DNA of 55,728 nucleotides from Octopus bimaculoides. Taxonomy: Eukaryota. Within the stretch, counting starts at the first letter, position 1. Each line of letters starts with the position of its first letter. Positions 14,039 through 14,423 of the stretch are shown one piece after another. Below the pieces are notes generated by a model. It worked only from the letters and a program-made list of their open reading frames with translations, had not been told where the DNA came from and made no database searches. Both the position numbers and the translations under genes were made by a program. Where the stretch lies: positions 9,097,131-9,152,858 of the forward strand of contig NC_068991.1 in assembly GCF_001194135.2 (NCBI RefSeq), in the 5' to 3' direction.

Positions 14039-14423
14039 ACCCCTAGGGGTCAGCCACACTTAAGTGGCAATATACTACACTTTATCGTGCAGTTACTGTT
14101 AATACTTCATTTAGAGAATTAACATTGCTTGTTTTCACCTTTTCGATATCAGTGAAGAATTTCACTTGAAAAGAAGATATAAGATTGCCAGGTTTTTGTC
14201 TCTCTCACCAAGGTCAGCGGCTATCGGACGCCGACGAAGGGAAATAACCCTGAAATCCGGATCCGTTCGTGCTGCAGATGTTGGTGAGAGGGATAACTAC
14301 CCTTGGCAAACAGGACACAGTCGTGTGTCGATAAGCCAGCTGGAGGAGATGTCCTCCTGGGGCTAAAAGCAACAGTAACATCCACCCCTAGGGGTCAGCC
14401 ACACTTAAGTGGCAATATACTAC
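14039..14423 (+). mobile_element. 345-nt unit bounded by a 40-nt direct repeat and containing a type I hammerhead-like ribozyme (retrozyme or Penelope pLTR-like)
   Basis: 14039-14078 is identical to 14384-14423, where a gap begins. Internal nested complementary segments surround a hammerhead-like core at 14225-14269. Confidence 0.6.
14225..14269 (+). ncRNA. Type I hammerhead ribozyme-like motif (core CCGACGA, U4 changed to C)
   Basis: Helix I CGGACG/CGTTCG, core CCGACGA, helix II AGGG/CCCT with loop AAATAA, GAAA, palindrome ATCCGGAT, AUC triplet ending at 14263. Confidence 0.65.

What the first reader, a model, noticed from the sequence alone, without database searches (positions are those of the whole stretch)
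14039..14423. Retrozyme-like 345-nt unit: direct-repeat bounded, rod-folding, hammerhead at its centre
Seen: an exact 40-nt direct repeat (14039-14078 = 14384-14423) defines a 345-nt period. Inside are six nested complementary pairs: 14092-14100/14371-14379, 14139-14148/14326-14335, 14185-14192/14302-14309, 14199-14211/14281-14293 (13 bp), 14217-14221/14271-14275 and 14225-14230/14264-14269. They close onto a hammerhead-like core (CCGACGA, helix II AGGG/CCCT, GAAA, ATCCGGAT, C). The repeat itself holds a CCCCTAGGGG palindrome and a GCCAC/GTGGC hairpin. Known: metazoan non-LTR retrozymes and Penelope pLTRs are tandem units of a few hundred nt with type I hammerheads, and retrozymes yield highly paired circular RNAs. 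Inference: this may be a cephalopod ribozyme-bearing circRNA or retroelement family. This copy has U4 changed to C and may be inactive.
Basis: partly seen in the sequence, partly recalled or inferred. Interest (0 to 1): 0.85.

Follow-up and report, generated by a model that had tools for sequence, protein, structure and literature searches.

The report
Decayed hammerhead-ribozyme retroelement copy (retrozyme-like)
This is a real but probably dead genomic copy of a small non-coding mobile element carrying a type I hammerhead self-cleaving ribozyme, of the retrozyme / Penelope-derived kind already known in animals including molluscs, so it is a correct identification of something fairly ordinary.

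Summary
The sequence features are real. A 345-nt unit (14039-14383) is followed by 40 identical bases that stop at an assembly gap. The "direct repeat" is therefore just the visible start of a second tandem copy, not a terminal repeat.

At 14225-14269 the unit has the full shape of a canonical metazoan type I hammerhead:
- helix I of 6 bp with a 3-nt/1-nt internal loop and a closing stem;
- helix II of 4 bp with loop AAAUAA;
- GAAA, then the 8-nt palindrome AUCCGGAU, then C17.

A descriptor for this shape finds 2 sites in the window, against 0.001 per shuffle and 0 in 54 kb of control DNA. Three more hammerhead relics lie in the window. One (53510-53551) shares 22/23 core bases but has a different palindrome, ACUCGAGU, reached by two compensatory double changes.

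Two copies cofold into a double hammerhead. The unit folds at z about -8, as a long stem plus a branched domain, not a rod.

Against activity, U4 is C, 10.1-11.1 is A-U, and Rfam's hammerhead models do not match this copy. No other copy of the 345-nt unit could be retrieved, and the organism was not verified.

Verdict: a decayed copy of a known kind of element; modest interest.

The parts
14039..14383 (+). One full 345-nt unit of the non-coding hammerhead-bearing element (GC 45% against 36% for the window).
   Evidence: Period 345 from the repeat. Folding z -7.85 linear and -8.1 circular. Longest stop-free frame is 83 aa with no homologue. GC.
14384..14423 (+). First 40 nt of a second head-to-tail copy, 100% identical, cut off by the assembly gap.
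   Evidence: Of 15 gaps, this is the only one whose complex (non-microsatellite) flank recurs elsewhere.
14424..14478 (.). Assembly gap (55 N) hiding the rest of copy 2 and the junction with the Tc1 relic.
   Evidence: Tc1 homology to ENA contigs runs right up to 14479.
14225..14269 (+). Type I hammerhead motif. Helix I 14225-14230/14264-14269. Core box 14231-14237 CCGACGA, with the U4 position 14232 = C. Helix II 14238-14241/14248-14251 (A10.1-U11.1) with loop 2 AAAUAA. G12-A14 at 14252-14254. Helix III palindrome 14255-14262 AUCCGGAU. C17 at 14263, with predicted cleavage 3' of it.
   Evidence: Own scans. Model R1, built from validated retrozyme hammerheads: 17.1 bits, full length, all 13 pairs formed. 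Double-hammerhead cofold -30.1 against 2 x -13.3 kcal/mol.
14217..14275 (+). Loop 1 region: closing stem GCGGC (14217-14221) / GCUGC (14271-14275) around an asymmetric internal loop, UAU (14222-14224) opposite U (14270).
   Evidence: Sequence and MFE. The same 3-nt/1-nt layout is seen in axolotl Ax353 (UUC/U) and Ax330 (UGC/U), read from the sequences.
14185..14309 (+). Long imperfect stem capped by the hammerhead. It is the main source of the unit's stability.
   Evidence: MFE -65.7 kcal/mol against -36.4 +/- 3.9 for shuffles, z -7.55.
14039..14068 (+). Two small hairpins at the start of the unit: ACCCCUAGGGGU, and GCCAC-ACUUAA-GUGGC.
   Evidence: Both are in the MFE; coordinates read.
13750..14038 (.). 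(CT)n, (CA)n and (TA)n microsatellites abutting the 5' edge of the element. This is the likely insertion context.
   Evidence: PLEs show an insertion bias for microsatellites, notably (TA)n (PMC8557442).
14479..14815 (-). Flank, not part of the element: a Tc1/mariner transposase relic with a stop codon and a frameshift.
   Evidence: Translation. Sleeping Beauty SB100X 5cr4, E 1.1e-11. PF13358 DDE_3 homologues.
53510..53551 (+). Related hammerhead relic (locus 2). Core AUGACGA (C3->A), identical helix II, loop 2 AAAUAG, helix III ACUCGAGU, C17 at 53548, then GCC and (TTTATATA)n.
   Evidence: 22/23 identity to 14233-14255. Alignment. R1 13.3 bits.

Best explanation
The locus is a fossil DNA copy of a short, non-coding, hammerhead-bearing retroelement. 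It belongs to the metazoan 'non-LTR retrozyme' kind, which is non-autonomous and derived from Penelope-like elements (PLEs). It was inserted as slightly more than one unit next to a microsatellite.

How the family most likely works:
1. Shown here: each unit carries a type I hammerhead whose helix III is only a short palindrome. A lone motif misfolds, while two motifs pair through the palindrome into a double hammerhead.
2. Inferred from studied relatives: in a multimeric transcript the double hammerhead cleaves after C17 (14263). This releases a 345-nt monomer with 5'-OH and 2',3'-cyclic phosphate ends.
3. Inferred: a host tRNA ligase (RtcB type) circularises the highly self-paired monomer.
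4. Inferred: a PLE reverse transcriptase copies the circle or multimer for more than one unit length, and the GIY-YIG endonuclease integrates the cDNA at microsatellites. That gives head-to-tail partial tandems.

This particular copy has C instead of U at core position 4 and is most likely catalytically dead.
For: - Architecture: the site matches the canonical metazoan type I hammerhead (helix I 6 bp, helix II 4 bp, helix III 1-2 bp plus a palindromic loop; PMC4209133). It also matches four validated retrozyme hammerheads, whose GAA is followed by ACGCGCGU-C, ACACGUGU-A, ACAUGU-C and ACAGUACUGU-C. Here it is AUCCGGAU-C.
- Rfam consensus: the Hammerhead_1 consensus printed (CUGAcGA, loop CAAAU, GAAACGcgCGUC) shares N7=C, the AAAUA loop and all helix lengths with this site.
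- Statistics: 2 descriptor hits in the window, against 0.001 per shuffle and 0 in 54 kb of control DNA. None of 31 chance matches to core plus helix II in metagenomes continues into helix III and helix I.
- Family evidence: locus 2 keeps 22/23 bases from G5 to A15.1. Its palindrome differs at 4 of 8 positions as two compensatory pairs (U-A->C-G and C-G->U-A). Helix I pairs 2.1:1.1 and 2.3:1.3 are also compensated. The two copies carry different single core defects (U4C and C3A), implying a CUGACGA ancestor.
- Model test: R1, trained only on published retrozymes, finds four sites in the window. Rfam Hammerhead_1 weakly sees two of them.
- Dimer behaviour: cofolding gives the double hammerhead.
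- Retrozyme-like body: 345 nt, no coding potential, GC 45%, z about -8, and more than one unit long.
- Context: the element abuts microsatellites. A head-to-head duplicated hammerhead fragment lies elsewhere in the window. Both are traits of PLE insertions (PMC8557442).
Against: - No Rfam hammerhead model reaches E<=10 on this copy or on locus 2.
- The core is not canonical: U4->C, and 10.1-11.1 is A-U where G-C is highly conserved.
- Only 1.12 units are visible, and the second copy ends at a gap. A true array is therefore unproven, and an assembly artefact is not excluded.
- No other copy of the 345-nt body was found in the window or in any reachable collection.
- No PLE reverse transcriptase or endonuclease ORF is in the window.
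- The R1 score alone is not decisive, because a bare hairpin in control DNA also reached 17.2 bits through the model's local-end state.
- The pair counts are circular, since those hits were selected by the same model.
- Transcription, cleavage and circularisation are untested.
Confidence: 0.72

Rival explanations
1. It is a fragment of an autonomous Penelope-like element, not an independent retrozyme family. That is, a pseudo-LTR or a 5'-truncated 3' end with the usual partial tandem or 30-40-bp 'tail'.
For: PLE insertions are 5'-truncated partial tandems. They often carry a 30-40-bp extension at one end, prefer microsatellites, carry hammerheads in their pLTRs and break short-read assemblies (PMC8557442). 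The visible second copy is 40 nt and the gap is sized at only 55 N. Retrozymes and pLTRs are reported to be phylogenetically intermingled (bioRxiv 10.64898/2026.07.22.740005).
Against: No RT or GIY-YIG ORF lies next to the unit or anywhere in the window. The hammerhead is of the 'canonical' retrozyme type, with helix I 6 bp, helix II 4 bp and loops 1 and 2. The minimal PLE type has a long helix II, a short helix I and a bulged base. The distinction is partly semantic.
Confidence: 0.17
2. It is a chance hammerhead look-alike inside an unrelated structured repeat such as a MITE, SINE or hairpin, and the 40-nt repeat comes from an assembly overlap at a contig end.
For: One core base is wrong, and Rfam finds no hammerhead. 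The repeat ends exactly at a gap. A looser descriptor gives 0.013-0.21 hits per shuffled window. The only Rfam matches are weak miRNA-hairpin hits far below their thresholds.
Against: The full-architecture descriptor expects 0.001 hits per window. Locus 2 shares the core with a compensated palindrome. Two further loci score on Rfam Hammerhead_1. Loop 1 and loop 2 match validated ribozymes. No other gap in the window shows a duplicated complex flank.
Confidence: 0.08
3. This very copy is still an active ribozyme or circRNA gene despite C4, either because a variant core is tolerated or because the base is an assembly or sequencing error.
For: Everything else in the motif is intact. A validated axolotl retrozyme hammerhead tolerates a U.U mismatch at 10.1-11.1. 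The two visible copies are 40/40 identical.
Against: U4 is one of the invariant core positions, and by established hammerhead mutagenesis, changes there strongly reduce cleavage. All four hammerhead-like sites in the window are defective in some way, which fits old, decaying copies.
Confidence: 0.03

Closest known systems
Metazoan non-LTR retrozymes (Cervera & de la Pena 2020, PMC7229834), for example mussel Mg353 and axolotl Ax353/Ax330
   Same: The unit size of 345 nt falls within 170-400 nt. It is non-coding, head-to-tail and strongly self-paired. The type I hammerhead has a 6-bp helix I, an asymmetric loop 1, a 4-bp helix II and an 8-nt A...U palindrome before H17. It is predicted to work as a dimer.
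   Different: The core has C at U4 and A-U at 10.1-11.1. Only 1.12 units are seen, where published arrays run from dimers to large multimers. Outside the ribozyme there is no sequence similarity to published retrozymes. No RNA evidence exists.
Penelope-like element pseudo-LTRs and their hammerheads (Cervera & de la Pena 2014, PMC4209133; Craig et al. 2021, PMC8557442)
   Same: Partial tandem structure, a microsatellite-adjacent insertion, palindromic positions in helix III, inverted truncated copies nearby (38205-38322), and assembly breakage.
   Different: There is no RT/GIY-YIG ORF nearby. The motif is the canonical type I form, not the minimal PLE form with a 7-8-bp helix II, a 4-5-bp helix I and a bulged base 5' of stem II.
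Rfam RF00163 Hammerhead_1 (Schistosoma / newt satellite type)
   Same: Same topology and helix lengths, N7=C, an AAAUA-type loop 2, and GAAA plus a palindrome plus UC (consensus shown).
   Different: This copy does not reach E<=10 against the model (gathering score 34 bits). Sister sites in the window reach 15.7 and 19.5 bits.
Viroid and satellite-RNA double hammerheads (ASBVd type)
   Same: A weak helix III that is stabilised only when two motifs pair, so cleavage is favoured in multimers and avoided in the monomeric circle.
   Different: This element is encoded in genomic DNA, has one polarity only (no motif on the minus strand), and is not an infectious RNA replicon.

Membership tests
Hammerhead ribozyme, type I (canonical metazoan form) | Conserved core: C3 U4 G5 A6 N7 G8 A9 ... 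G12 A13 A14 ... A15.1-U16.1, H17 | tested here: not met
   12 of 13 specified positions are present, but position 4 is C (14232). Locus 2 has U4 but carries A at position 3.
Hammerhead ribozyme, type I (canonical metazoan form) | Three helices in type I topology: helix I open (6 bp), helix II 4 bp with a loop, helix III 1-2 bp plus a small palindromic loop | tested here: met
   Helix I 6/6 pairs, helix II 4/4 pairs with a 6-nt loop, helix III AUCCGGAU. Definition taken from PMC4209133.
Hammerhead ribozyme, type I (canonical metazoan form) | G10.1-C11.1 base pair | tested here: not met
   It is A10.1-U11.1 in both locus 1 and locus 2. A validated axolotl motif has U.U at this pair, so the pair is not absolutely required.
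Hammerhead ribozyme, type I (canonical metazoan form) | Loop 1 / loop 2 elements that support the tertiary contact | tested here: inconclusive
   The layout (UAU/U internal loop, AAAUAA loop 2) parallels Ax353, Ax330 and the Rfam consensus. The contact itself cannot be tested in silico.
Hammerhead ribozyme, type I (canonical metazoan form) | Score at or above the Rfam RF00163 gathering threshold | tested here: not met
   No hit at gathering or at E<=10.
Hammerhead ribozyme, type I (canonical metazoan form) | Self-cleavage 3' of H17 | not testable with these tools
   Needs in vitro transcription of monomer and dimer constructs.
Non-LTR retrozyme | Tandem repeat of a 50-1000-bp unit with a type I hammerhead in every unit | tested here: inconclusive
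   One full unit plus 40 nt of a second are visible, and the rest is hidden by the gap. Monomer derivatives are common in known families.
Non-LTR retrozyme | Non-coding, with GC below about 50% | tested here: met
   Longest frame is 83 aa with no homologue. GC is 45%.
Non-LTR retrozyme | Highly self-paired monomer | tested here: met
   z -7.85 linear and -8.1 circular. The fold is branched, not rod-like.
Non-LTR retrozyme | Multicopy family in the genome | not testable with these tools
   The source genome is not available. There is no second copy of the body in the 55.7-kb window and none in the searchable collections.
Non-LTR retrozyme | Expressed as linear and circular RNA | not testable with these tools
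   No RNA data are available.
Penelope-like element (autonomous) | RT plus GIY-YIG endonuclease ORF flanked by pLTRs | tested here: not met
   The window has no long ORF other than runs through N or microsatellites. The neighbour across the gap is a Tc1 relic.

The most novel reading that the evidence does not exclude
Its master copies would carry an intact CUGACGA core with an unusual A10.1-U11.1 base pair. They would be transcribed from tandem arrays, cleave as double hammerheads and accumulate as circular RNAs of about 345 nt. This locus would be one dead offspring of that family.
Probability: 0.3. Interest if true: 0.4.

Novelty: new member of a known kind. Interest (0 to 1): 0.27.

Why it matters
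If the family proves active, it would extend ribozyme-processed circular RNAs to another animal lineage. It would also provide a natural hammerhead with A-U at 10.1-11.1 for structure-function work. The window shows about one hammerhead relic per 14 kb, often next to microsatellites, which illustrates how much Penelope/retrozyme debris such genomes hold and how it breaks short-read assemblies. As it stands, the locus is a pseudogene-like copy of a known class of element and changes no open question.

Tried and rejected
- Rfam at gathering on the whole window, and at E<=10 on 531-nt and 106-nt slices: no hammerhead at this locus. The only hits are weak miRNA-hairpin matches far below threshold, which I rejected as generic hairpin hits.
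- Looking for other copies through spurious ORFs: the 83-aa frame, and then all other frames joined into one query, against the 5.8-billion-protein set. Nothing found.
- Exact-product look-ups of two window ORFs: not on record.
- Exact scans for the shared 23-nt core in the metagenome, viral and prokaryotic genome collections: 0 hits.
- A scan for an intact-core version of the motif in metagenomes: 31 hits. That is about the chance number by my own rough estimate, and none continues as a hammerhead.
- Reaching the source genome through the neighbouring Tc1 relic: this gave ENA contigs that share only the Tc1 sequence (74-82% nt identity) and hold no hammerheads, so they are not from a close relative.
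- tRNA or SINE origin: no tRNA-like gene anywhere in the window.
- Treating the R1 bit score as proof: rejected after a bare hairpin in control DNA reached the same score. I replaced it with a full-architecture descriptor test.
- A pure rod model: rejected, because the circular MFE has 8 hairpin loops.

Full report
OBSERVATION. The window shows an exact 40-nt direct repeat, 14039-14078 = 14384-14423, spaced 345 nt apart. The second copy ends exactly at a run of 55 N (14424-14478). The repeat is therefore not a terminal repeat bounding an element. It is the visible start of a second head-to-tail copy of a 345-nt unit, so 1.12 units are visible in all.

Among the 15 gaps in the window, this is the only one whose non-microsatellite flank recurs elsewhere. 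That is what a short-read assembler does on re-entering a tandem unit, but it also means the junction cannot be verified here. Beyond the gap, on the minus strand, lies a Tc1/mariner transposase relic with a stop codon and a frameshift. It matches Sleeping Beauty SB100X at E 1e-11. Its homology to related copies on ENA contigs runs right up to the gap edge at 14479. If the 55-N size is roughly right, the second copy must therefore be short. Upstream, the unit abuts (CT)n, (CA)n and (TA)n microsatellites.

THE STEMS AND THE FOLD. The + strand RNA folds at -131.1 kcal/mol against -89.6 +/- 5.3 for dinucleotide shuffles, z -7.85. The minus strand gives z -4.65, and the circular form z -8.1. Most of this stability comes from a 125-nt stem, 14185-14309, capped by the hammerhead (z -7.55). 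The remaining 220 nt, read across the tandem junction, are also structured (z -4.1). In 32 background 345-nt windows, only pure microsatellite palindromes reach such values; all the others are >= -2.5. The fold is not a rod: the circular MFE has 8 hairpin loops, no fewer than the shuffles.

THE HAMMERHEAD. In standard numbering the motif reads as follows.
- Helix I, 5' strand: CGGACG (14225-14230).
- Core C3-A9: CCGACGA (14231-14237), with position 4 = C.
- Helix II: AGGG/CCCU, with loop 2 AAAUAA (14238-14251).
- G12-A14: GAA (14252-14254).
- Helix III: AUCCGGAU (14255-14262).
- C17: 14263.
- Helix I, 3' strand: CGUUCG (14264-14269).
- Beyond helix I: an asymmetric internal loop (UAU opposite U) and a 5-bp closing stem GCGGC/GCUGC.

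This is the 'canonical metazoan type I' architecture as defined in PMC4209133: helix I 6 bp, helix II 4 bp, helix III 1-2 bp capped by a small palindromic loop. The supplement of PMC7229834 prints four experimentally cleaving retrozymes. After GAA they read ACGCGCGU-C (mussel), ACACGUGU-A and ACAUGU-C (axolotl), and ACAGUACUGU-C (coral). Both axolotl motifs have the same 3-nt/1-nt loop 1 followed by a closing stem. The Rfam Hammerhead_1 consensus printed (CUGAcGA ... CAAAU ... GAAACGcgCGUC) shares N7=C, the AAAUA loop 2 and all helix lengths with this site.

IS IT CHANCE? I ran four tests.
- A loose scan with U4 left free finds only this site in the window. Sites as strong occur 0.013 times per shuffled window.
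- A stricter full-architecture descriptor requires <=1 core mismatch, helix II 4/4, GAAA, a 6-10-nt palindrome, H17 and helix I >=5/6. It finds two sites: this one and 39620-39573 on the minus strand. It gives 0.001 per shuffle over 1000 shuffles, and none in 54 kb of control eukaryotic DNA of similar GC.
- A covariance model built only from the four published retrozyme hammerheads (A2, R1) ranks this site second in the window. It scores 17.1 bits over the full length with all 13 pairs formed. I do not lean on that score, because in control DNA a bare hairpin reached 17.2 bits through the model's local-end state.
- In metagenomes, 31 chance matches to CTGANGA-AGGG-N6-CCCT-GAAA were found, and none continues into a palindromic helix III with a complementary helix I.

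FAMILY EVIDENCE INSIDE THE WINDOW. A sensitive self-search found a second locus, 53510-53551. It is identical to the finding at 22 of 23 bases from G5 to A15.1 (alignment). Its core is AUGACGA, so it has U4 but A at position 3. Its helix III is ACUCGAGU. That differs from AUCCGGAU at four of eight positions, arranged as two fully compensatory changes (U-A to C-G, and C-G to U-A), so the 8-nt palindrome is preserved. Helix I pairs 2.1:1.1 (G:C to C:G) and 2.3:1.3 (A:U to G:C) are also compensated. The rest of helix I is lost where a (TTTATATA)n repeat begins, 3 nt after C17.

So the core is conserved, the helices covary, and each copy carries a different inactivating core change. This is the pattern expected for decayed descendants of ribozymes that once had a CUGACGA core. 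Homology between the two loci is limited to the ribozyme, so the carrier elements differ.

Two further relics exist. At 38266-38309 there is a canonical CUGAUGA...GAAAC...GUC core with a decayed helix II. It scores 19.5 bits on Rfam Hammerhead_1 against a gathering score of 34. It forms one arm of a head-to-head inverted duplication, 38205-38322. At 39620-39573 (-) the core is UUGAAGA with a G-C pair at 10.1-11.1, and it scores 15.7 bits on Rfam. Across the four sites 93% of pair cells are paired, against 24-40% when the partners are slid. That count is circular, because the sites were chosen by the same model.

MECHANISM. As a single motif the segment misfolds: the core CCG pairs into the palindrome (-13.3 kcal/mol). 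Two copies cofold into a double hammerhead with an 8-bp intermolecular helix III (-30.1 kcal/mol against -26.6 for two monomers). This is the dimer-dependent behaviour reported for amphibian retrozymes and PLE hammerheads.

The following steps are inferred from those studied systems and not shown here. Multimeric transcripts are cleaved after C17. The 345-nt monomer is circularised by a tRNA ligase (PMC7229834). A Penelope-like reverse transcriptase then makes more-than-unit cDNA, which its GIY-YIG endonuclease inserts preferentially at microsatellites, giving partial tandems (PMC4209133; PMC8557442).

This locus fits the end product: slightly more than one unit next to (TA)n. It carries U4->C. 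Established hammerhead mutagenesis shows that changes at invariant core positions strongly reduce cleavage, so this copy is very probably inactive. The A10.1-U11.1 pair is shared by both related loci, so it is a family trait. A validated axolotl motif tolerates U.U at that position.

WHAT COUNTS AGAINST.
- Rfam's hammerhead models do not match this copy or locus 2, even at E<=10 in 106-111-nt searches.
- No second copy of the 345-nt body could be found in the window or through any reachable database.
- No PLE ORF is in the window.
- The tandem junction rests on a short-read contig end.
- I could not verify the organism. The nearest Tc1 relatives are on unnamed ENA contigs that share nothing else with the window.

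COMPARISON AND NOVELTY. The closest known system is the metazoan non-LTR retrozyme (PMC7229834). A 2026 preprint argues these are non-autonomous derivatives of Penelope-like elements, with consensus lengths of 51-972 bp and frequent monomeric derivatives. The locus works like one and has its architecture. Strict membership fails on the canonical core in this copy, and it is untestable for copy number and RNA.

Hammerheads of this type are already known in molluscs (about 5000 in mussel). In a cephalopod genome, 235 Hammerhead_1 loci have been annotated (PMC6962438). I found no paper describing octopus or squid retrozymes. This is therefore at most a new member of a known kind, seen here as a fossil.

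VERDICT. The 'direct-repeat bounded' and 'rod' descriptions need correcting, and the interest is modest.

Noticed in passing
window 53510-53551 (+): A second hammerhead relic that shares 22/23 core bases with the finding. Its core is AUGACGA (C3->A) and its helix III palindrome is ACUCGAGU. The element ends 3 nt after C17, where a (TTTATATA)n microsatellite begins. Its upstream body is unrelated to the 345-nt unit.
   Followed up: partly
window 38205-38322: A head-to-head inverted duplication of a hammerhead-bearing fragment that forms a hairpin of about 118 nt (MFE -61.3 kcal/mol). The 3' arm has a canonical CUGAUGA (38271-38277)...GAAAC...GUC core with a decayed helix II, and scores 19.5 bits on Rfam Hammerhead_1 (gathering 34). 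It also draws spurious miRNA-precursor hits.
   Followed up: partly
window 39620-39573 (-): A hammerhead-like motif with core UUGAAGA (U3 opposite G8), GCCC/GGGC helix II, helix III AUGGCGCUAU and a 5-bp helix I. It scores 15.7 bits on Rfam Hammerhead_1. It lies 1.3 kb from the 38.2-kb relic, on the opposite strand.
   Followed up: partly
window 14479-14815 (-): A Tc1/mariner DDE transposase relic (FQDDNAPIHTA ... WPPQSPDLN.IEHLW) with an internal stop and a frameshift. The closest copies (74-82% nt identity) are on long ENA contigs from ERZ21867824 and ERZ22157276, organism unknown.
   Followed up: partly
whole window: There are 15 N gaps totalling 4200 N, nearly all flanked by microsatellites, and 92 tandem-repeat rows. 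GC is 36%. This is a short-read scaffold of a repeat-rich animal genome. About one hammerhead relic occurs per 14 kb.
   Followed up: no
window 53250-53313 (+): A sequence ending in an A-run (...CTAAAACAAGTAAAAAAAAAAAG) just upstream of locus 2. It looks like the poly(A) tail of a SINE or other retroposed element.
   Followed up: no
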